Positions 3,759-35,400 of a stretch of 64,000 nucleotides of DNA are shown in pieces. Position 1 is the first letter of the stretch. Each line of letters begins with the position of its first letter. The DNA is from Saccostrea echinata. Its lineage: Eukaryota. Both the position numbers and the translations under genes were made by a program. Below the pieces are notes generated by a model. It was not told where the DNA came from. It worked only from the letters and a program-made list of their open reading frames with translations, and searched no databases. The stretch is from contig NW_026889796.1 of NCBI RefSeq assembly GCF_033153115.1, forward strand, positions 2,604,001 through 2,668,000. The letters run 5' to 3'.

Positions 3759-5478
3759 TTACTCTATAAAATGCAAATGCTTGTCTTCAGGAACACCATA
3801 CTTTAATTTGTGCGTTTCAAATAGTTTTTCTAATTCTTCTAAGTACTTTTTATGGAGTGCATCAATTTTCTCCTGAGAGGGATCCTCGTCTTTTTCGACT
3901 TGTATTGGAGCACCGACTGCATAAAAAATATAAAATATAAATCACAATACATATCTACGAGGGCTATTCATAAAATTATGACACTAAATGTATTCCATTT
4001 AAGGTTTTCAATCGCTAATATCATCAGATTCAATGAAATTGACCTAGATCTAATGGAGTCCATTAGATTTTATATATACAGCTTTTACATGTATCATTTA
4101 TATCTAAGTAATTACAGGGTATATCTAGCTTTCATTCATGTAGCATTTTGCTTTCATTATAATGTCTATCTAAAAGAAATCTAATTAAAATCATACTGAA
4201 ATTTGAAGAAGAAGAAAAAATTCGGCATATCTCTACGAATGAAAAATTTGATAGAAATCACCTTTTACCTTGGAATTGTTTTTGAGAGTACTAGTAATAC
4301 AATACTGTAGTCATTTATCCAGTTAGAGTTATCTCTCTTATCCAAGGGTCAATGAACCTTAATTGCAACTGGCATTCTGAAAGCAGAGTAATGCAGGTAA
4401 AAATAGTTTTGAGTTATTACCAACTGTGTAGACAGGAATTCTGTATGGAACTAGACCGAACGTGTAGTTGAACATTCCTCGTCCGTGAAAAACAGGGGGA
4501 GAGAACCCAGTGTATTTTGTCAACCAGTTTTGGAGGTTTCTCAGTCGGGATCCCTCAGGATTCTCTGCTTGTACAAACAATTCGTGCTCACCAAAAGAGA
4601 ACATCGGAACTAAACATGCCCTGAGTATGACAAAATTATTTGTTTAAATTTTTGTAATTTTTGTGAAAACCAATAAGTGTTTAATTTAATGTATCTTACC
4701 CCGTCCGAAGTGCCACTTTGATAAAACCTTTCTTCTTTGCGAGTTTCAAATTAAACTTTCCCGGAAATGCCTCTAATGCTTCTAAAGCTCCGCCCACTAC
4801 TAGACCAAGAGCATTTCCTGTCCCATGCCTCGTCAAAAGGAATTTCATACTTTTTGCTGTAGCTTCAACTGCCCCTGGAAAATAAAAAAAAAATCATGAC
4901 CTATTAGTTTTTGCACTCAAAATTATACGTACGAGTTACTTTCTTCTGTGCAGCATTGGAAGTTCTTTTTCTAAGGTTATGAACTTACCACCTGCCATGA
5001 AGTAATCCCTATATACAGGAAATTGGAAATGGCCCGGAAGTACCAGTAAGTATGGCGTAATGCCCGGAAATGTTTTGCTCCAGCCAGAACCTTCAGTAGC
5101 AAAGTGGCAGAAAGCACTAACACTGAGTATTCCATGAGGATGAAAACCCATTATATAGTTCTTATTAGGATCCAGATCCACTGTTTTTATCAAAGTTATA
5201 GGAAAGTATCGCTGAAAATATCTCCACACAGCCCATTCTCGTATCCATTGACATCGTCGTCCACCTTGAGCTGACTTCTTTCTATCGTAAACGTAGAAGG
5301 CCATGTATAATAGTGGGATCCAGTAAAAGGATGTAAATAGTAAATAAATCATGAAAAATAAACATCCAAATCCCAGGAACAAAAAGGACAGCGTCCATTG
5401 CTGAACTGCTAATGTCTGGAGTCGACGCTCCATCGGTATGTGGAGAGGCGCGAAATCTATTCCTAAGATTTTTGTCAT
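3759..5478 (-). CDS. DGAT2/MOGAT-family acyltransferase (2-acylglycerol O-acyltransferase-like), 340 aa, 4 coding exons
   Basis: Exons 5478-4989, 4874-4700, 4620-4421 and 3916-3759, all GT-AG and frame-consistent (1023 nt). Family motifs: [70 protein letters not shown]. An acceptor just before the ATG (5481-5483) implies an upstream 5'UTR exon; candidate donor at 7094-7089. Confidence 0.93.
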
Positions 5479-8400
5479 CTCTGTAAAAATATTAGACATA
5501 AAATGGAAAGTATTAATACGGAAACTCTTTTTTAATTTTAGAATCGTCTAAAAAACAGTTTTGATATAATATGCATGTAAAATGTTTTGTTGAAAGATTT
5601 ATTTATTCATCAACCTCTCAAAAGAGAAATACAAGTACCAGGCCCTTAGGAACCGGGGCCAACCGGGGCCAATAATTTTGCCTATATAAAGTTTGCTATA
5701 GAAAACGAAGCTACTTTTACATGATTGTTAAGGAATTTCTGTTTGGTTTGTGCTCCCCCCCCCAACTGAAAATGTTTGGTTGCCCCCCCCCCCAAAAAAA
5801 AATAAAAAATGAAATTACTTCCTAGAGTGTACGAATTTGATGGAAAATGATTTTTGAACAATTTAAGTTAGCGTAGATTTTCTTAATGTTCAGTTCTTGT
5901 GCAAGACTTTTACGTTGTATACTTGAATTAGCGGAAGTTGCCTTTTTGATATTTTGATAAGTTTACAGTAATATATATGTTATATGTATATGCAGTACTC
6001 CAAACTTGTGATTTAGTGCTTTATCACCTTTAAGGGAAGAAATGATAAGTCTAGCTTTATGAACTTAATTTATGATATTAAACTCATATTAACTATACAA
6101 GTATTGCGAGTTTCTGCTAATATCATTTAACTTTTTTAAGAAGTTTGCGCCCTCACCTAACTCTATCATGGATCCGTCCCTGCTGTATACATTCCCATGG
6201 ACCTATATAGTTTTTTTAATTACTCTGAAAAAACATGTATATTCCAGTGTCCAAGGAGTCAGTTAAATTTAAACATATATACATTAGACAAGGAAACCCT
6301 TCCCCCATTTCCTCCTTCCAATACTATCCCCCTTCCACTCCTTCTTCCACCTCTCTCTCTCTCTTTCTCCTTCCACAGCATACTGTATGTGTACTAAAAA
6401 AGCGGGCTTCATATTTTAGCGACTTTGGAGCGGACAACACAGTGCGCTAATTCATGAATACATCTTTAATAAATCATTCTTGAATACAAGTGTGTACATC
6501 GCTAATTCCTGGTTGCGCCAAGCACTAAATACCCAGAAGTTGCGCTAAATTTTGAATACGTCAATTTCTGCACACGTACAATATTCTTATAATGAAGCAT
6601 TAATGGATATAATTAATCCTTGAATCGCCAGTAACTATTTTTGCTATTAGGGATACTCGTCTGATATGTCGCGGTACTTTGAAAGGGCGTAATAATTTCA
6701 AACGATTTTTTTTTAAAAACCTTGACATTGATGTTATACTGTTTACAACATATTACATACGTGTGAGCACACTGATCGATCTGAAGGTCATGCATGCACA
6801 TTTAAAACAGAATGGTTTATATAATCACTATTTTCCAAAAAAGGACGAGAAAGGGGGATAAATGCGCGATTCAAGAGGTTTTTTCTTCAAGTTTCAGATA
6901 GCCCATATTGCATCGTGCATTGACTGATTGTACACTATATATAGATGCTGCCCCTTTGGGTGCCCCATTTCATGATTTTTCTCTGCTCTACGATAACTCA
7001 CTAATTTTCAGGTATAGCGGAAATACCTGTGCTAATATATTAACTTTTTTTTATCCCACTGAATGAGCAAATGTACATGCAAACTTTTACTTACTTATGT
7101 TTCTTGTCCGAACCGAGGAAGTGTGACACTTATAGCCTGAGATCAAGTCCAAGGAACACACAACACAGAGATAAAGTGCATGCGGGGGCGGATCAAGGTT
7201 TTAAATTCCTGCTTGAATTCATTGTGCTTTATCATATGCCAACCGATCACCAGCAACATGACACAACGCTGTCAATCTTTTCAAAAGGAGGAAAAAAGCA
7301 CAGGAAATGCCTTATTTTAGACGTTTACGTTTTTGTTTAATGAATGTTATATTTGTCAAAAAATGCTTATATAATATTTAGAAAGTTAATTTCCAAAAAG
7401 TAAATTTAAAAAAATACTTTTTTAGGAATAACAAAGTATGTATTTTTTGGTAGTTGGGTTAATTTAATTATCGACGTGCGGTTCTTGAAACTTTACGCGC
7501 ATATGGTAGTCAAGGGGCTATGAAATAATCAAAGTTACAGATTCATTTAAGATTTCTATCTACATCATCAATATACTCAGTATTATCTTTTTTATTATTA
7601 TTATTGTGGACTTGTTGTTAGGTGTACATGTAGGGGCGGATGCAGGATTTGTTGTCAAGGAGGGGGGGGGGGAGGGGTCCACATCAACGGTAACAAATGT
7701 CAGACTCGGAAATTATTTTGATGAGCAAAAAAATATTTTTAAAATATCTAAACTTGCCAAAACCTAAAAAAATTTATTTCATGGAGGTGGGACACTTTCC
7801 TCAGTCAATTTTCTTCTGATAGACTTTTAATGGGTTCGTGTTTCCTAAGGGGAGGGAGTCCAAGGTGTGTGTGTGTGTGTGTTTGTTTTGTTTTGGTTTT
7901 TTTTTTTTTACTTTTACATAGGAATTTAATAACTCCATCTGGAAAATTCAGAGGGGGGATCTCCTCGGCTCCACCCATGAGGTGTATCATGTATTTTGGA
8001 GATATCTTTAATTGTCCAATGTTTGCTGAATTTTGCGTTTCAGTCACAAACGTCATAAATAAGATAACCAAATATTTCAAACACGTGCCCTTGGTACTTT
8101 ATCACAATAAGCATATATAATCTAAATGTAATTATTTTGTATAATGCATAAATTTATTGATGTTTTTAATTTTGTATGATATCAATTGATGCTTAAATGT
8201 ATTACATTTATGTAATTGTTGATAATTGAAACATACTTTACCAATTCTCATATCAATGCGTAGAGAAACAGGCACAAAGCCTTATATTTTAACTTATTAA
8301 CAAACTCTGGAAAAAAATTGACGGGAATTAAATTTGTTTTAACGATCTGTTGTTACGGATATTGACACTTTAGAATTAGACTCATTAGATTCACACTATT

Positions 8401-15031: not shown

Positions 15032-17038
15032 TTGAGAATTCCGACAGATTGTTGGAAGACCTGGTCTCCAAAAATTACATAGATATTGTCAATCAGAAAC
15101 TCGACCATCTTTTCAATGTCAACTTCAGAGTACGTGTGTGTACAATCAGAATGTTTTCTGACAAAATAATTTTGCAAATGACCAATGACAAAGTAACTAA
15201 ATTTACGAGTTTCATTTTTATTGAAAAAGCAGCTGTCAATGATGTCAAATAGCCTGGACTTTAATTTATCGTGGGGAATGGTTGTATTAAGCGCTGAAAA
15301 GTCGTACGTTTTGATGTTATTGATTTTGGTAAAATTTTGTGATTTTAAATTAAATTAAAAGTTCCTTGGAATTTTTAAGTATCCACATCTGATTTACACC
15401 AATTCTCGAAAATATATTGTTGTGCAGTACTCCTGAAGTTTTTCCTTTACTGCTGTTAAAATATTTAGCGGAAATTGATAAGCAGAGATTTGCTTTAGCG
15501 CTTTCTGAACGAGCTAGATATAAATATATACATACCAGCCATTTAGCAATGTACTTGATTCAGCGGAAGTTGCTTTTCTCCAAAGGCGCTCAATAGAGTA
15601 CACCACCAAATTTATTACGTTTACAGTATCTCAGACGATAAGAATTTTATAATGAAGAAGCAATTCCCCCTCCCCGATCCTCTAAGAAATGTTTTAGACA
15701 CGTAAACGTAGCAAAAATACAGGAATCCTTGGCAACCTTACCTGAAGTCTGACATTTGATATCATTTCCGATTCTTTAATGTGAAATAAAATCTTCAACA
15801 TGACTATTTTAAAAAATATATGTCAGAAAGGACTAAGCTTACGAGATTACCTCTCTATCGATATATAAAAAATTCTAGTATTTTTAGATTAGAAAATTCT
15901 CCGGGGTGGGGGAGTAGGGGGCTACAACATCCATACGTCAGGTGCCTGTGCAACTGTACATAAGAAAAGTTTCCCATGCAAGTACATGTACAGTACTAAA
16001 TATCACGATTTCCTTACATTGAATTCATGTCGGTACTGTATTTTCTTGTTCATAGTTATTGAAATTTTACAAGAAACACATCATTGAAGTATGAATCAAG
16101 ATTATTTTGGTGTTTAGTAAACTAGTGTCGTTTACTGATTTTTATTTGAAAATTAAAATAAGTCGTGTACTTAATTTTCAAATAAATATCATTAAACGAC
16201 ACTGGTACCCCAGGTGTTTATGGGTGATTCATACAATTTCAAATATAGCCTGTTTATTAAGTTTATTATTGGAAGTGCTGAGTTGAATGGAGGGGTGACA
16301 AATATGGTAAACAACCCGGGAGATGATATGAGGATTGAAAGAAGGCGGGTCATTTAAGATATTGACAAAATAATGACTGTCAAAAATCGTTAGGGTCAGT
16401 GATAAATCTCTCAGGGGTCTGGAAAAGCCTTTTGTTTTCAATGATATGGAGAAATGGCTCCTGCTGATAAGTGAATGATCTGGCAACAAATTGTGAAATC
16501 TTTCAAACTCTATCTCCTAAACCATTTATCTCTATAACTGATATGCAATATCATTCTAACCTCTATAGTTAAGTATGGTAAGGCGAAATCGTTTCCTAAA
16601 ATTTACGAGACTTGTATTATTACGAGGGTTTTTCACTAATACCGGGGGCCGACGTGTTTTTTATTTGGTGGTTGATACAAGGACATAAATCTGTTCCTAT
16701 CAAGTCCAGACTTCGGGGTTGTTTTTAACTGTTTAATGCAGTTTGGCTATCCTCTTTTATACCCAGGATCGCAAATCATTTTCTTGTTAGAAGAGCCAGT
16801 CAGTTGTATACAAATCACTAGCCAAGTTCGTACCAATTAATCTTTAGCTTCTAAATAAAAAGCAATTAACATTTTCTTAATTTAGAAGTCTACAGTGAAT
16901 AACTGGGAACTCTCCCTTAATCATTTGTATGTTTATTTTGGCTTTATGAATTCAAGGCTTAACAAACACTTAGGGTATTGTTATCAACCCCCAAGACAAA
17001 CCCTGAATCGCGATTGGATGGAACAAAAGGTTAGAGAT

Positions 17039-17044
17039 TATAAA
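17039..17044 (+). promoter_or_regulatory. TATA box of the BRICHOS-protein gene
   Basis: TATAAA ~60 nt upstream of the ATG at 17101 that opens a signal-peptide exon. Confidence 0.5.
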
Positions 17045-17100
17045 TAAACTTGCTAACTAGAACTAAGCGGAAATTTCAAAAAAGTTTCAGCTTTAAGACA

Positions 17101-20100
17101 ATGGATTTCTTGTACATTGTGACTTTTGTAGGAGCTTTATTGGTAAGATTTCAGTGAAAAAAAAGGATATAACATTTCTCTTATTAAATACATTAAAACC
17201 ATATCTATTAATAGTATATAGATTGATAGATATAGCCTATACTGAAAAAAAAAAACATTTAAGAAAATGATAGTCTTAAATTTCTTTCTTTCTTTTTTAA
17301 ATCACTCTTTGTTACTTTCGTATAGATCTGGATTTGGACTGAATCGTCAATTCCTAGTTTTGATTTATTTATTGATAAAAAAAAATATCTTTTTTAAATT
17401 TGAAAAGTAACTACTAGTATCTTATTAAATGCTAAACTGGTCCATATTTTAGTCTTAATAAGATGCACCACATTCAAAGCAAAATTTCAAATTAGGAAAT
17501 TCAAAGTTAATATGTAGAGACGGCAGACATTGGACAAAAAATTTAAATCTGTCCAATATTCTTTCTTATTTGTCAGATTCCAAATCTTTTCAGTAATGTT
17601 ATTTCAGTCTAAGTTCAAACTCGGAGTGTTCTTAGAACTTTCGCAATATTGCAAGAGTTTTTGATCACCTTAACTGCTAAAATTTCTTCAGTAATTGGAC
17701 ATTTTTTCTCCATTTCCTTTTTCTTTTTTTTTTTAATTAGAATTTTTTTTAAAATGATTTTTTAAAAATAATACTGTATATAATTTTGTTATTGTAATTT
17801 TTTTTTTTGGTCGAGAAAAAAACCAGACTGATCTTTTTTTGTTTTTCAGTATTGCGAGGGCCGGTATTTCCGACCGTTTCCGATTTCTTCCGAGCCTCAG
17901 TCTGTGTTTGATGCCATTGAGAGGAATACAGATTTACATTACAACGATAAAGATAACGTAGGTGTTATGAAATATACATACTTATCAGAAGTAAAAAGAA
18001 AAAAGGTGCTTGAATCGGCAAATGAAAAATGTCGCGTTATCCAAAGATGTATGATATTTAAAAAAAAACAGTTTCTTTAAGAATCTACAGATCATATGCA
18101 TGTGCATAGTCTAAAATTTCTGATGATAATCATTTTTACCTCAAGCAGAAAAAAACTGCAGAAATTGTTGAATTCATAGATTAAACAGTGAATTTGTATG
18201 GACAAGCTTTACAAGGATAAATAATCTGCCATAGTATTAAGCGCTGAAGCCCTTGGATCTCAGAATATGAATGGTTTGCGATATTACTGTCCTAAGAAGT
18301 TAAAAATTGTGCTTTACTTAAGCAAGTATATAATATACCTTCCTAAAATAAAATATTCGAAATTTGTTACAATGTTATACCTTTAATGTAAGTTTATTAG
18401 GAATTTATGTCAAAATGTATGTCGATAGGTCTACCGGTATATGCTAAGCTTAGTTGTCTTCAAAATTACAGATATTGTAACATGTGTAGGCACACTTGTA
18501 CATCTATGAACGCAAGACAAAACTGAACAGGACACCTGGGCATATACGTTTAGAAAACAAATATATATTTTATAGCTATTTGTTCAAAATTTTTTTGCGA
18601 ACCAGATGACGAAGATGGTCTGTATCGTGTGAATTTATTGCGTAACAAGACCCGTAGAAATTGCCTTTCTGGGTGCGACACTGTTCGAATGACATAATTT
18701 CATCAAATCGTACTTTATTACAATAGTCGGAAGACAAACAGATAACCCATATCTCATATATGACAATCCATTCTGACCAGAAGGAAAAAGTTCCTGGATA
18801 CCGGATTATTTGTTCCTGATGATAAACAGATTCCAAGACAACCGCTCGCTTACATCTGAATTCTATTGTAACTACTGATAGAATATTTAGCATATTTTAA
18901 AATTCTTTCTACTTTGATGATTCTAAGAGGTCATTCTGACCGATTCCGAATTGAAAATAAATTAATTCGGGTTAAATAAAGGTCTGTAAGAAGACAATTC
19001 GCGGATTTCAAGCAAGAGTGCATTTGATTTTCTATTTTTACCTTTCCACGCTTAGATACTAGTTATGGGTTAAATAGGGAAAACGATTATAATAGCTTTT
19101 TTTTTATCTTTCTCCAACAGAAGTTGTTGTGACATGTACGCTGGTGATCATGTTTTACAAAAGAACTCGAAATCAAGCGAATATGAATCGCTTATGAATT
19201 AGCTCAGATTTGTAGCTCGCTGGTCTGAAAAAAAAAATTGGAATGGAACTGCAGATCTGTAGCTCTTTGGTCTGAAAAACTTGGGAGGGAGGACCTTTTT
19301 TTCGGAGAGCTACTGTTCTGCAGCTGCATATTAATATGACCTCAATCAATACAAAAATGTCTACGATTTTAAGAATATCCATGTCAGGACTTCTTTTCCT
19401 TCTAGGCTTATAATATTCGACATGCCTGCATGATCATAACGTAATATTAATCATCATGACCTTGACGTCTGGGGTCCTCATACTCAAGTATTTAGTTTTG
19501 ACATTAGTCTCCATAACAGTCCTTTAATCCGTATTCTCTCTGATCTAAGCGCAACATTTTATGTGTTATCAATTTCATGCTGTAATGTGTATATGATATG
19601 TTTCCAAATTCGGTATGCAACTGTAGTATTGTAGCAACTAGATCCATTTTCATGATCTTGCTTTTAATTTAAAATTAAACCATTTGCCGACCTTTTTTTC
19701 TTCTACAGAAAAATGATAGTTAACTTATTATTCGATTATATCATATTTTAAGGGAATAACAGTTATTCGAGATGTTGACTTCCGGTCCTGTTATATCACA
19801 GACTACGACCCGGAATGGAGGTTGGACCAGGACAGTAAGATTGCCGTTATGGCGGCTGTGGTAAGTTGTGTATTTTTATCGTTTTGACGAATGAGTGCGA
19901 AAGCCGGATAGGCTCATTTTTGAGAAAACTAAGAGAAACCTCTTTATAACTTACTATCTTGTAATATGAAGTTAAATATCTCGTTATAACGATTTCGTAT
20001 CTAGTAATAATGAGTTAGGATTCAGAGTCGCCGGGTAAAACGAATTACCGGGTAGTTACTAGTATCCGTTATAACGAGGTAGTTTTCTCATTATTACGAG

Positions 20101-21616
20101 ATAATAGAAATTGATCATAAGAGTTGAAATCTCTAATTAGATTTCTTTACTCATCAAAATATGATTATCGATAGCAACTTTACCGTAATTCAACCCTAGA
20201 GATAAATAGTTTCAACCATTTAATCAATTGACTTCAAGTTAAATTCGACTGATAATCATTAATTCAAAATCGATTAAAAACTACTGGGTCCAAACTACTG
20301 CAATTTTCATTCCTAAATTGCTATTATATTTTCTCGAAAGAACAAACAACTATCTCGTTATATCGAGATATATCGTTATCTCCTTCTAACGAGAAAGCTG
20401 TATGATCTCCTTATAATGAGATTATAATAACTCTTTATAATGAGATACTGTACTGACTCGTTATTACGACATATTAACTCCTTATAACTAAATTACTAAC
20501 TTGTTATAACGAGGTAACTAACTCGTTATAACGAGATAACCATCTCGTTTTAACGAGATAACTAACTTGTTATAACGAGATTCTAACTCGGTATATGTGC
20601 CAGCGGGCACGAAGTGGATATAGTTGAGGTGAGGTAACACGTTATAACTCGAGATAATCATCTCATTGTAACAAAAAACTAACTTAATATTATAACAAGA
20701 TAATTAACTAGTTAGAACAAGATCCTAACTCGTTATAACGAATTCAATATTTTTATATGCCTTCTCAGAAATGAACCTTTACGGCTTCCGTACAAGAGGA
20801 ACGTTGGCTTTGATGAAAAAGTTTGTGTTCATATTTTCTCTCCAAAAACGATGTCTTAAAATTCATGTACAGTATAATTCATTTAGCTCTCTCTTTTTAA
20901 TCTAAACAATTTAAGGTTCATTGATACTCTGATAAGAGAGATAACTCTTAACGACATAAATGTCTATTATTCCTTTATAAAATTTTTCAAGTTGAAATGT
21001 TTTTATTGTCCAAATTTGCCCCGCAAGCCATGATGCAATTGTTTTTATTTTACTTATAAAATACATATCTTTTGGAAAATCATAAGCGTTAAAGCAACAT
21101 TTTGTATGAGTGAACAGAGGGTTTATGAACCTTAATATCTTATTATATTTTATTCAGACGCCAAAAATAATGAGGAACGAGGACTTACTCAGTCAGTTCA
21201 TTAATCATGTTGGTCCAATTGTTGGCAAACTCTGCAGAACAAGTAAAATATACGAAGTTAAATCTACAGACATAGACCAACACATCGACGAGTCGCCAGT
21301 TTCTGAAACACCACCCGTGCCACGTGTTCCATCACCTCGGAAAATATATTACGACAGCGGAGAACCCGAGGTTCCAAGGCCATTCAGAATCCCCACCAAA
21401 AAACCCGAGTTCCAGAAACACAATGAGCATGAAGAAATTAGATTCCCCACAAAAAGACCAGAATTCAGCGGTTTCCAACACCGACCGTTTGCGCATGAGC
21501 AACATGCTCATCAAGTTCCTGCAAGACATGACGCTGGACAATTTGTGGTTCCCAGACCTTTTCAGCAGGCTGTTCCCCAGCTGAAACACCGTGGTCACGG
21601 ACACTTCCGAAAATAA
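17101..21616 (+). CDS. Secreted BRICHOS-domain precursor with a Pro/Arg/His/Phe-rich C-terminal extension (one middle exon unresolved)
   Basis: Phase-0 exons: 17101-17142 (MDFLYIVTFVGALL); 17850-17957 (YCEG|RYFRPF...DKDN); probable 18576-18617 (LFVQNFFANQMTKM); an unresolved exon; 19753-19860 (GITVIRDVDFRSCYITDYDPE...); 21158-21616 (TPKIM...HVGPIVGKLCRTSKIYEV...HGHFRK*). The G.T.IRD....CYI and G..V..LC....Y motifs are the two-cysteine BRICHOS signature. Confidence 0.65.
19201..19325. mobile_element. Small TIR element (AGCT(G)CAGA...TCTGCAGCT)
   Basis: Short inverted termini; a related copy lies in opposite orientation at ~60006-60092. Confidence 0.55.
19895..20793. mobile_element. TIR DNA element carrying a degenerate ~22-bp palindromic tandem array
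   Basis: Imperfect TIRs of ~32 bp (gtgcgaaagccggataggctcatttttgagaa / ttctcagaaatgaacctttacggcttccgtac) and internal repeats of ctaactcgttataacgagataa. Confidence 0.7.
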
Positions 21617-22111
21617 AGCAAAAAAGATGAAGTCGTTGTTCCTGTTCCTTTGCGGCAGGGGACATCTTAGAGACAAAAGTAGATTTAAGAGAAGAGAGAT
21701 CCACAATTCACGCACAGTTTATTTTCTTTTTGGCAACTTTCACGAGTCTCCTAAGTTGTGCTGTATTGTTCTATCGTAATTTATCGTCATTATATTTCTT
21801 TTCAAAATAAATTATATATTATACATTCTGAATACATGCATGTATATATCATAAGAGATAGTGTTCATATTCGTTTATTTCTTTCGAAACTTTTCAGAGA
21901 ACTAGTAAAATGCATGCACTTAATTTTCTTCAATTTTGGGCATAATGGTCTATTCCCGTCATAATTAGTCGAATAAAAGATATTCCAGCTTTCTTGGAGG
22001 ACATGATCCCAACTTTAAGTCTCTTCTTAACCACAGAGATAAATGTTAGTACAGACTTCATATTTACACTACACGACGGTGCTTTCATTTAAAGGTACAT
22101 CCATCTAGTAA

Positions 22112-34023: not shown

Positions 34024-35237
34024 CAGAGAGATATCCAAAGATTCAAGATATCAAGAGTAAAATACTTAAAGAATAAATGGTTGGGACTTGCAAATTACTT
34101 CATCATATCCATGGTATTTAAGAAGTTCAACTGTATAGTTATTTTATCTGTAAAATATCCAATTTTTTTTAGATCGAACTGATGCACTAGTTTTCATGCT
34201 GTTTACCACAATAATAAGATATAGTACAATGTCTTGCAACAGACCTAAGTTCTGAGAATATCTTGACAAATAATTATAACAACAATGCCCTGCAAAACAA
34301 GTGAGATATTTCAATCTGCACAAACTCTCATTCTGTTAAAAAAGAGAAATATAGTAATACTCATCTTTAGAGGTTAGGTAGCTCCAAATTTTTATGACTG
34401 TTTTTCATAATTTTCTTTAAAAATAATTACTTTTAGTCGTATAACAAAAATTAATTCTATGACTAGTACATGTAATAATCATTATCAGAAATGATGAATT
34501 TCAGTCTCCCCCAAATGTAGACGGTATTGATTATTGATGTTTTCACCTGATAGTTGCTTTGTGTAGTGACCATCAGAATTTCAAAGCAAATCAAAGATCT
34601 GTTTTAATCATGTTACTCAGATTGGCTTTACATATACATGTTCATTTACATAGTTTGAAACATTCATGCATTTTGCTTTAAATAGAACTGCATATTGTCG
34701 GTCTTCTCTTTCATTTTTAAATTAATAAATTACAGTACCTAATAAACAATCGATAGCTCTTTTTTTCGACCTACCTATTGCTCCTATTTTTCTATCTTCA
34801 ATCCACACGCCTGTTTCTTGATCAGCATTTGCCTTTAAACCAAATTTTTTACAGGTATCAATCATGGTTTTCTCCAATGCACACACATACCACTTCATGC
34901 TAGGTTTAAAATGTTTTAAGTTTATAACTGGATAAGCAACCAATTGTCCAGGCCCATGGAATGTTATAAGTCCACCTCTGTCTGTTCGGACAAAGTCTGC
35001 TCCAGTGCAGAGTAATTTTTCCTCAATTTCTTCATCATAGTTTTTGCTTCTGATTCCTATCGTATACACAGGATCATGCTCAACTAACAACAAAGTATTA
35101 TCTGCAGATGGTGTTCTTCCATGGAAAAAATCAAAATGTTTCTGTTTGTATTTGTTCTGGACCTGCTCTGCAGCTCTGAATCCCATACGACCAAGATTGA
35201 CAACCTGGATGAGTCGTGATGCTCCATCCATGTTCAT
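31656..35237 (-). CDS. LIPT2: Octanoyl-[ACP]:protein N-octanoyltransferase (lipoyltransferase 2, LipB family), ~260 aa; start codon uncertain
   Basis: Exons 35237-34775 and 31975-31656. Motifs: LLLVEHDPVYTIG, TDRGGLITFHGPGQLVAYP, TGVW...RKIGAIGIH..RYVTTHGISLN, IVPCGI..KGVTS. An acceptor at 35268-35266 shows that at least one upstream exon exists. Confidence 0.93.
32398..34021. mobile_element. Helentron-associated non-autonomous element carrying ~7.5 copies of a 166-bp satellite monomer (Cg170/HindIII-like oyster satellite), in the LIPT2 intron
   Basis: Monomer anchor ccctattgtgg at 32655, 32805, 32971, 33137, 33303, 33469 and 33635 (period 166, one 16-nt deletion); aacaagaggcccatgggcc start; (gaca)n tract; terminal hairpin agctcacttgagccttcggctcaggtgagct. 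Confidence 0.85.
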
Positions 35238-35400
35238 GGGCTGACTCCAGAACAATCCTTTGAACCTGAATCAAGAGGATGTTTAAATTTGATACATCAG
35301 ATTTTAAATCCAAGGTCAAGAGGAAAGGAATAAGATATAAGTATTTACTAGCTTGTAAATTTCAGTACAGAAATCACAGTCATGATTATCTTTTACACTC

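What the first reader, a model, noticed from the sequence alone, without database searches (positions are those of the whole stretch)
17101..21616. Secreted BRICHOS precursor with a Pro/Arg/His-rich repeated tail: candidate undescribed bivalve host-defence or processed-peptide system
Seen: TATA box, a signal peptide split over two exons (MDFLYIVTFVGALL/YCEG), the BRICHOS cysteine motifs (GITVIRDVDFRSCYI ... VGPIVGKLCRTSKIY), an acidic linker, then a ~100-aa Cys-free tail. The tail has repeated motifs (VPRVP, VPRPF x2, HRPF; RIPTKKPEF/RFPTKRPEF), basic pairs (RK, KK, KR) and a His-rich end (HEQHAHQ, KHRGHGHFRK). Known: in polychaetes BRICHOS is the pro-domain chaperone of antimicrobial peptides such as arenicin and alvinellacin, and PRP motifs typify proline-rich AMPs (apidaecin/oncocin/Bac7 type). 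Inference: the tail may be cut into cationic Pro-rich or metal-binding His-rich peptides, i.e. a BRICHOS-chaperoned peptide precursor in a mollusc. The ORF track shows only the last exon.
Basis: partly seen in the sequence, partly recalled or inferred. Interest (0 to 1): 0.8.

Follow-up and report, generated by a model that had tools for sequence, protein, structure and literature searches.

The report
Oyster BRICHOS-like protein with proline-rich tail
This is a real, expressed oyster gene for a secreted protein that joins a very divergent BRICHOS chaperone-type domain to a floppy, proline/histidine-rich basic tail. It belongs to a small mollusc-only family that nobody has named, and nothing yet shows that the tail is cut into antimicrobial peptides.

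Summary
Four exons (17101-17142, 17850-17957, 19753-19860, 21158-21616) encode 238 aa. This equals NCBI's 'uncharacterized protein LOC133202742' of Saccostrea echinata. Spliced contigs from two studies confirm all three GT..AG introns.

The BRICHOS call is probably right but sub-threshold. Pfam PF04089 is the top hit at only 14.4 bits (cut-off 25). However, the family keeps the BRICHOS signature of one Asp and two Cys. AlphaFold models of two members have proSP-C BRICHOS (2YAD) as their best PDB match, with modest scores. ESM Atlas neighbours are gastrokine, proSP-C and ITM2 clusters.

An exhaustive search of 1.84 billion representatives found 12 relatives, fragments included; every one that carries a species name is a mollusc (oysters, scallop, Solemya, abalone, Babylonia). 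The full-length members share a signal peptide, an acidic BRICHOS-like domain and a Cys-free, basic, Pro-rich tail that differs between lineages.

The peptide-precursor/AMP reading is not supported. The tail's charge density is low (+4 over 119 aa). Its KK/KR pairs are followed by Pro. No processing site is conserved after the domain. The gene is single-copy.

I read it as a new mollusc BRICHOS subfamily whose tail most likely acts intact. Tissue and function are untested. The scan noted other BRICHOS-like genes elsewhere in this genome.

The parts
17039..17046 (+). TATAAATA, candidate TATA box 55 nt upstream of the ATG
   Evidence: Sequence. The octamer is not enriched in the window (15 found, 10.7 expected). 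The transcription start is not mapped.
17101..17142 (+). Exon 1 coding part: residues 1-14, first part of the signal peptide. The ATG is in an A(-3)/G(+4) context and is the first ATG after an in-frame stop.
   Evidence: Joint 17141/2>17849/50 in a spliced contig of run X3.
17850..17957 (+). Exon 2: residues 15-50. It holds the end of the signal peptide (YCEG), the highly conserved segment RYFRPFPISSEPQSVFDAIERN, and the start of the BRICHOS-like domain with the invariant Asp47.
19753..19860 (+). Exon 3: residues 51-86, BRICHOS-like strands with the first invariant Cys (C63) and helix 1.
21158..21259 (+). Exon 4, first part: residues 87-120, BRICHOS-like helix 2, the second invariant Cys (C112) and the last strand.
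21260..21337 (+). Acidic linker, residues 121-146 (the wider stretch 119-146 has pI 4.3). It is the least conserved part among oysters (35-50% identity).
21338..21616 (+). Basic Cys-free Pro/His-rich tail, residues 147-238, plus the TAA stop. It holds two degenerate repeats (FRIPTKKPEF / IRFPTKRPEF) and the His-rich end LKHRGHGHFRK. It is predicted disordered.
   Evidence: (pLDDT under 50).
21617..21670 (+). Relic of a lost C-terminal extension. After the stop the same frame reads SKKDEVVVPVPLRQGTS, matching the extension that other oysters still translate.
21806..21811 (+). AATAAA polyadenylation signal. The transcript contigs end at 21838-21852.

Best explanation
The locus is a single-copy, expressed four-exon gene of Saccostrea echinata. 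It encodes a 238-aa secreted protein with four parts: a cleavable signal peptide; a short, strongly conserved N-terminal segment; an acidic, highly divergent BRICHOS-type domain of about 80 aa (invariant Asp47, Cys63, Cys112); and a disordered, Cys-free, net-basic Pro/His/Gln-rich tail.

It belongs to a small, so far unnamed family seen only in molluscs (bivalves and gastropods). In that family the BRICHOS-like domain is conserved. The tail is a lineage-specific array of short Pro-rich basic repeats with a hydrophobic-[KR]-x-P-[PT] core.

Inferred mechanism: as in other BRICHOS proproteins, the acidic domain acts as an intramolecular chaperone and charge-masking pro-part. It escorts the sticky basic polyproline-type tail through the secretory pathway. 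Outside the cell the tail is the working part. It most likely acts largely intact, as a multivalent binder of polyanionic surfaces or metals (mucus, matrix, mineral or microbial surfaces), rather than being diced at dibasic sites into small peptides.

Shown: the gene model, splicing, family, domain signature, fold similarity, and tail composition and disorder. Inferred: secretion, the chaperone role, an intact tail, and its binding function.
For: Gene and transcript. Single copy.

Family: 12 hits among 1.84e9 representatives, several of them fragments. Every hit with a species name is a mollusc, and all named ones are 'uncharacterized' or 'hypothetical'. A word search with the wider profile added no new species or full-length member.

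BRICHOS:
- PF04089 is the top Pfam hit in 7 of the 8 full-length members scanned. The best is 17.8 bits, E 0.004, covering HMM positions 10-91.
- D47, C63 and C112 are invariant in 9 sequences. One Asp and two Cys are the only strictly conserved BRICHOS residues (bioRxiv 10.1101/2021.12.01.470723).
- The AF2 domain has pLDDT about 90.
- For the Haliotis member's model, the seven best Foldseek hits are all BRICHOS entries, E 0.015-0.8.
- ESM Atlas: the top feature and structure neighbours are gastrokine-2, proSP-C and ITM2 clusters carrying PF04089.

Tail:
- pLDDT is under 50.
- There is no Cys; Pro is 15-29%; net charge is positive in 8 of 9 members and 0 in the ninth.
- The repeat core recurs in 8 of 9 members.
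- Oyster tails are 59-82% identical, with invariant motifs.
- No dibasic site is conserved between the domain and the tail.

Against: Both AF2 models rest on the same shallow 9-sequence alignment. No signal-peptide predictor was available. There are no tissue, protein or processing data. BRICHOS clients are usually beta-prone segments, which a Pro-rich tail is not. The repeat core motif was defined post hoc on the same sequences.
Confidence: 0.5

Rival explanations
1. One reading: a BRICHOS-chaperoned precursor whose basic tail is released and cut into cationic Pro-rich and/or His-rich metal-binding host-defence peptides. This would be a mollusc counterpart of the polychaete BRICHOS-AMP precursors, a cathelicidin-like platform with a conserved pro-domain and a variable effector.
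For: The layout matches: signal peptide, acidic BRICHOS pro-part (pI 5.3), basic C-terminal part (pI 10.3, net +7 over 92 aa). The total size of 238 aa compares with 239 aa for pre-pro-nicomicin (PMC6265681). Polychaete C-terminal parts range from 18 to 91 aa and can be linear and Cys-free (PMC10745061). The tail is hypervariable between mollusc lineages while the domain is conserved. Crassostrea-like orthologs have a KR site before a last 24-aa peptide. Solemya has KRK about 17 residues after the second Cys.
Against: Oysters, scallop and gastropods have no K/R-R site after the domain. KK/KR are followed by Pro, which by general knowledge disfavours convertase cleavage. RK148 is not conserved (HK or PK in other oysters). 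Charge density is low: net +4 over 119 aa, at most +3 in any 25-aa window, and net 0 in P0003. Arg is 9% and Pro 15%, far from Bac7/oncocin-type peptides. The gene is single-copy, whereas bivalve AMP genes are typically multi-copy by general knowledge. Tail motifs are invariant across oyster genera. The peptide after the Crassostrea KR site is not cationic, and Saccostrea has lost it.
Confidence: 0.2
2. The BRICHOS-like domain itself, together with the ultra-conserved N-terminal segment 19-40, is the functional unit: a secreted gastrokine-like chaperone or signalling protein. On this view the tail is a fast-evolving low-complexity appendage with little sequence-specific function.
For: Residues 19-40 are 95.5% identical between oyster genera, against 71-77% for the domain and 59-63% for the tail. 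Tails differ completely in length (83-561 aa) and repeat type between lineages. The nearest ESM cluster is gastrokine-2. Saccostrea lost the last about 24 residues through a stop codon without the gene decaying.
Against: Every full-length family member keeps a Cys-free, Pro-rich tail that is net basic (net 0 in one), which argues for selection on the tail. Oysters keep invariant tail motifs such as KIY[YF]DSGE, RPF[RK]IPTK and IPQLK. Residues 19-40 are not conserved outside oysters, apart from R19 and P25.
Confidence: 0.2
3. The domain is not a BRICHOS homologue. It would be an unrelated small alpha/beta domain that converges on a similar arrangement and a similar Cys pattern.
Confidence: 0.1

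Closest known systems
BRICHOS domain superfamily (Pfam PF04089; proSP-C, Bri2/ITM2, gastrokines, chondromodulin/tenomodulin, BRICD5, groups I/II, AMP group)
   Same: About 80-90 aa alpha/beta domain with the conserved Asp and two Cys. Proprotein layout with an N-terminal hydrophobic segment, a linker, BRICHOS and a C-terminal region. The best structural match is 2YAD.
   Different: Sequence is below Pfam's threshold in every member. The Cys-Cys spacing is short (49 residues). The C-terminal region is a long Pro-rich disordered repeat rather than a beta-prone or Cys-rich segment. The family is restricted to molluscs and not annotated as BRICHOS in any database record seen.
Polychaete BRICHOS-related AMP precursors (arenicins, alvinellacin, capitellacin, nicomicins, HfBRI peptides)
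   Same: Signal peptide, acidic BRICHOS pro-part, then a basic, highly variable C-terminal part. Similar overall length. Both are lophotrochozoan.
   Different: There is no dibasic cleavage motif after BRICHOS. The tail is longer (83-561 aa), proline-rich, repetitive and of low charge density. No amphipathic helix or disulfide hairpin is present. No activity data exist. Reviews state that BRICHOS-AMPs are known only from polychaetes (PMC9756803).
Gastrokines (GKN1-3)
   Same: Secreted through a cleavable signal peptide rather than a type II membrane anchor. Small single-BRICHOS proteins. The nearest ESM Atlas cluster by features is gastrokine-2 (score 0.88).
   Different: Gastrokines are vertebrate stomach proteins without a Pro-rich repeat tail. 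No detectable sequence similarity was found by HMMER.
Proline-rich AMPs (apidaecin, oncocin, Bac7; in oysters Cg-Prp), from general knowledge
   Same: PRP-type motifs (VPRPF x2, HRPF). Cys-free, extended, not amphipathic.
   Different: Those peptides are short and strongly cationic, with Arg-rich repeats. Here Arg is 9%, acidic residues are interspersed, and no window of 25 aa exceeds +3.

Membership tests
BRICHOS (PF04089) | Match to the Pfam HMM at or above the gathering score (25 bits) | tested here: not met
   P0001 scores 14.4 bits, E 0.046, HMM positions 10-39. The best family member, P0012, scores 17.8 bits, E 0.004, HMM 10-91. BRICHOS is the top hit in 7 of 8 full-length members scanned. 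Single exons give no hit. The genome scan with PF04089 does not flag this locus.
BRICHOS (PF04089) | One strictly conserved Asp and two conserved Cys (disulfide), the only residues conserved across the superfamily (bioRxiv 10.1101/2021.12.01.470723) | tested here: met
   D47, C63 and C112 are invariant in 9 sequences from bivalves and gastropods. The Pfam match starts at D47. The 2YAD alignment offsets place D47 on Asp105. The disulfide itself was not tested.
BRICHOS (PF04089) | BRICHOS fold (central beta-sheet flanked by two helices), conserved secondary-structure order | tested here: met
BRICHOS (PF04089) | Proprotein with an N-terminal signal or membrane segment, a linker, BRICHOS and a C-terminal region | tested here: met
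   Hydrophobic residues 3-15 with CEG at -3..-1. Other members have classical signal peptides. No SignalP was available.
BRICHOS (PF04089) | A beta-prone or aggregation-prone client segment in the same proprotein | not tested
   No aggregation predictor was run. The tail is Pro-rich and predicted disordered, so it is an atypical client.
Polychaete BRICHOS-AMP precursors | Dibasic (K/R-R, KK) propeptide cleavage motif between BRICHOS and the C-terminal peptide (PMC6265681, PMC10745061) | tested here: not met
   No such site follows the domain in oysters, scallop or gastropods; only Solemya has KRK. In the window's protein, KK and KR precede Pro, and RK148 is not conserved.
Polychaete BRICHOS-AMP precursors | C-terminal part of 18-91 aa enriched in positive charge | tested here: inconclusive
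   The tail has pI 9.6-10.3 but only +4 over 119 aa (+7 over the last 92). It is net 0 in P0003 and +65 over 561 aa in Solemya.
Polychaete BRICHOS-AMP precursors | Antimicrobial activity of the released peptide | not testable with these tools
   Needs synthesis and MIC assays.
Proline-rich AMPs (Bac7/apidaecin/oncocin type) | Short, strongly cationic peptide with a high Pro and Arg share and repeated PRP-type motifs | tested here: not met
   Pro 15%, Arg 9%, Asp+Glu 12.6%. The maximum net charge is +3 in any 25-aa window. Only three RP[F] motifs are present.

The most novel reading that the evidence does not exclude
Molluscs have a BRICHOS-based effector platform of their own. A conserved acidic BRICHOS pro-domain would carry fast-evolving, basic, proline-rich tails that are released extracellularly as host-defence or surface-active peptides. 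That would be the first BRICHOS-linked defence family outside annelids, built on polyproline repeats instead of hairpins or helices.
Probability: 0.2. Interest if true: 0.75.

Novelty: new variant of a known kind. Interest (0 to 1): 0.45.

Why it matters
BRICHOS is studied as an anti-amyloid chaperone domain, and in annelids as the pro-domain of antimicrobial peptides. A mollusc-wide subfamily that escapes Pfam and carries non-amyloidogenic, proline-rich basic tails would widen the known range of BRICHOS clients. It would also give a testable case of what the domain does for a disordered polycationic cargo. For oyster biology it flags a conserved, expressed, secreted gene with no assigned function, and a candidate mucosal, matrix or defence component. 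The AMP idea remains a testable minority reading, not a result.

Tried and rejected
- Exon-by-exon Pfam scan at E up to 10: no hits, because the exons are too short.
The full-length protein came from the database as P0001.
- PF04089 scan of the whole genome found one canonical BRICHOS exon elsewhere (C8, L001) but not this locus.
- Family profile against the own genome: only this gene, no paralogs.
- PDB sequence-profile searches with A1 and A3: only chance hits (mitoribosomal protein, nanobodies).
- Word-based search with the wider profile added no new species or full-length members, only one more fragment cluster, P0038.
- ESM Atlas on the tail alone: nothing.
- Literature: no paper holds the LOC or XP identifiers or a conserved peptide string. 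One broad literature query was badly framed and uninformative.
So I obtained no sample or tissue information and no ortholog DNA for dN/dS.
- The bacterial promoter/terminator scan is irrelevant here.
- Run kinds and tissues were coded, so the expression site is unknown.
- I considered a shell-matrix or adhesive role from composition alone. I did not adopt it as a separate claim because there is no expression or proteome evidence.
- OAF-type domain (an ESM neighbour): no Pfam OAF hit, so rejected.
Full report
**Observation**

The region holds a four-exon gene on the + strand.
- Exon 1, 17101-17142, reads MDFLYIVTFVGALL.
- Exon 2, 17850-17957, starts YCEG.
- Exon 3, 19753-19860, starts GITVIRDVDFRSCYI.
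- Exon 4, 21158-21616, holds VGPIVGKLCRTSKIY, an acidic linker and a Cys-free tail of about 100 aa, then TAA.

All introns are GT..AG and phase 0. The mechanical ORF list shows only the last exon. The word search with exon 4 returned a 238-aa database protein (P0001, NCBI 'uncharacterized protein LOC133202742 [Saccostrea echinata]'). Its sequence is exactly the four exon translations in order.

**Transcript evidence**

Contigs of four public runs (three samples, two studies) were laid on 16900-21900. They skip 17142>17850 (one run), 17957>19753 (three runs) and 19860>21158 (four runs), each with GT..AG ends. One 876-nt contig has no mismatch.

The runs' kind is only guessed as RNA. However, the genome holds no intronless copy: only these exons match P0001. 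The spliced contigs must therefore derive from mRNA. The contigs end at 21838-21852, 27-41 nt after AATAAA (21806-21811).

TATAAATA lies at 17039-17046. The octamer is not enriched in this AT-rich window (15 found, 10.7 expected), so it is only positionally suggestive. Tissue and expression level cannot be read from contigs.

**Is the domain BRICHOS?**

Pfam gives nothing for single exons. A genome scan with PF04089 does not flag the locus. On the full database proteins, BRICHOS is the top Pfam hit but below the 25-bit cut-off:
- 14.4 bits for P0001.
- 13-15 bits for three oyster orthologs.
- 12.5-17.8 bits, now covering HMM positions 10-91, for scallop, Solemya and Babylonia relatives.

The alignment of nine family members keeps only 16 invariant positions. 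Among them are D47, C63 and C112. One Asp and two disulfide-forming Cys are the only residues conserved across the BRICHOS superfamily (bioRxiv 10.1101/2021.12.01.470723).

The AlphaFold model built on this alignment has a confident domain (residues 33-127, pLDDT about 90) with the order strand-strand-strand-helix-helix-strand, and an unstructured tail. The structural searches gave these results:
- Foldseek against 350,542 PDB chains puts the proSP-C BRICHOS structure 2YAD first, with a weak score (E 0.37).
- A second model, of the Haliotis member, has BRICHOS entries as its seven best Foldseek hits (E 0.015-0.8).
- The ESM Atlas neighbours of residues 28-130 are clusters named gastrokine-2, proSP-C-like and ITM2 that carry PF04089. 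This holds both by features (0.86-0.88) and by structure (TM 0.56-0.58).

In the 2YAD alignment (model 39-120 to chain 97-197), the linear offset places D47 on proSP-C Asp105. From my own knowledge, unverified here, it also places C63 and C112 on Cys121 and Cys189.

Each line of evidence is weak. They are partly independent, all point to BRICHOS, and nothing else comes close. I rate BRICHOS homology at about 85-90%. It still fails Pfam's formal threshold.

**The family**

A profile of the four oyster sequences was scored against all 1.84 billion representatives. It found 12 proteins at E below 0.001, several of them fragments. Every hit that carries a species name is a mollusc:
- Saccostrea cucullata.
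- Two unnamed clusters closest to the oyster sequences, known only from public run assemblies and here called Crassostrea-like. One has 191 member sequences.
- Ostrea edulis (LOC125658830).
- The scallop Ylistrum balloti.
- The protobranch Solemya velum (694 aa).
- Haliotis asinina.
- Babylonia areolata.

All records with a name are labelled 'uncharacterized' or 'hypothetical', and none has a precomputed Pfam domain. A word search with the wider profile added no new species or full-length member.

The full-length members share a signal peptide, the BRICHOS-like domain and a Cys-free, Pro-rich (15-29%) tail that is net basic in eight of nine members. Tail length (83-561 aa) and repeat unit differ between lineages. 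A short core of hydrophobic-[KR]-x-P-[PT] recurs in eight of nine tails, for example FRIPTKKPE, FRTPPRPFP, IRTPPPLH and VKTPPSANH. I defined this motif post hoc.

The gene is single-copy in this genome. Its neighbours look like unrelated housekeeping genes, judged by eye from two ORF translations only (a DGAT2-like and a LIPT2-like exon).

**The tail and the peptide-precursor idea**

In favour:
- The pro-part is acidic (pI 5.3), the linker more so (pI 4.3), and the last 92 residues are basic (pI 10.3, net +7).
- This mirrors polychaete BRICHOS-AMP precursors. Those are of similar size, and their C-terminal parts can be linear, Cys-free and up to 91 aa long (PMC6265681; PMC10745061).

Against:
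- Polychaete precursors have a dibasic motif right after BRICHOS. Oysters, scallop and gastropods have none.
- The KK and KR of the window's protein sit in PTKKPEF and PTKRPEF, before Pro. By general knowledge this is a poor convertase context.
- RK148 is HK or PK in other oysters.
- The tail carries only +4 over 119 residues, and no 25-residue window exceeds +3. One Crassostrea-like ortholog has net 0.
- Arg is 9%, unlike Pro/Arg-rich AMPs.
- Oyster tails keep invariant motifs across genera, such as KIY[YF]DSGE, RPF[RK]IPTK and IPQLK. The gene is single-copy. Both facts fit a binding module under purifying selection better than an arms-race effector.

The precursor reading is therefore possible but unsupported, at about 0.2.

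**Most likely mechanism**

By analogy with other BRICHOS proproteins, the acidic domain probably chaperones and charge-masks the basic polyproline-type tail during secretion. The tail then acts extracellularly, and largely intact, as a multivalent binder of polyanionic surfaces or metals. Candidates are mucus, matrix, mineral or microbes.

These steps are inferred, not shown. A rival is that the domain plus the ultra-conserved segment 19-40 is the functional unit and the tail is a variable appendage. That segment is 95.5% identical between oyster genera, more than the domain itself.

**Comparison and novelty**

The closest known relatives by architecture are the annelid BRICHOS-AMP precursors and the vertebrate gastrokines. 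Reviews state that BRICHOS-AMPs are known only from polychaetes (PMC9756803). No paper in the library mentions these mollusc genes.

This is best described as a new, mollusc-restricted variant of the BRICHOS proprotein theme, distinguished by a proline-rich repeat tail. Earlier notes of this scan list other divergent BRICHOS-like secreted genes on other pieces of the same genome. I could not relate them to this gene: profile searches of the genome hit only this locus.

**Limits**

- No signal-peptide or aggregation predictor was available.
- Both structure models rest on the same shallow alignment.

Noticed in passing
window 21614-21670: Right after the TAA stop the same frame reads SKKDEVVVPVPLRQGTS. 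This matches the C-terminal extension that Crassostrea-like (KR|SDNSQEVAVPVPMRQETPHLRQP) and Ostrea (RK|SVVPVPIRQEAS) orthologs still translate. Both Saccostrea species end at RK, so the genus lost the last peptide through a stop exactly at the dibasic site. The family profile aligns through the stop.
   Followed up: partly
window 17862-17927 (residues 19-40): The segment RYFRPFPISSEPQSVFDAIERN, directly after the signal peptide, is the most conserved part among oysters: 95.5% identical against 71-77% for the BRICHOS-like core. In gastropod relatives an R-x-K-R motif sits at the equivalent place. The mature N-terminus may matter functionally.
   Followed up: partly
window 20407-20595 and 20690-20739: Intron 3 holds a tandem array of a 22-bp unit with a palindromic core (CTCGTTATAACGAGATAACTAA, 8.4 copies, 75% matches). 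Related copies occur nearby.
   Followed up: no
window about 20910-21138: A dispersed repeat just upstream of exon 4 is matched at 90-95% by many unrelated contigs of the RNA-like runs, which have loose ends on both sides. It is probably a SINE/MITE-type element that is transcribed within other genes.
   Followed up: no
L001 (G000:C8:11189230-11189349, minus strand): This exon passes Pfam's BRICHOS cut-off (30.9 bits). It reads ...YTAIVDYDKRSCYIMKLD..., close to the window's DVDFRSCYITDYD. It is a canonical BRICHOS gene elsewhere in the genome.
   Followed up: no
window 4936-5499 (-) and 34722-35255 (-): Flanking ORFs look like exons of a DGAT2/MOGAT-type acyltransferase and a lipoyl(octanoyl) transferase (LIPT2-like). 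This is judged by eye from the translations only.
   Followed up: no
window 21533 and 21493: Run-specific differences in the tail coding region. G>A at 21533 would change Ala212 to Thr (run X3). G>T at 21493 is synonymous (run X4). Overall diversity among the four runs is low.
   Followed up: no
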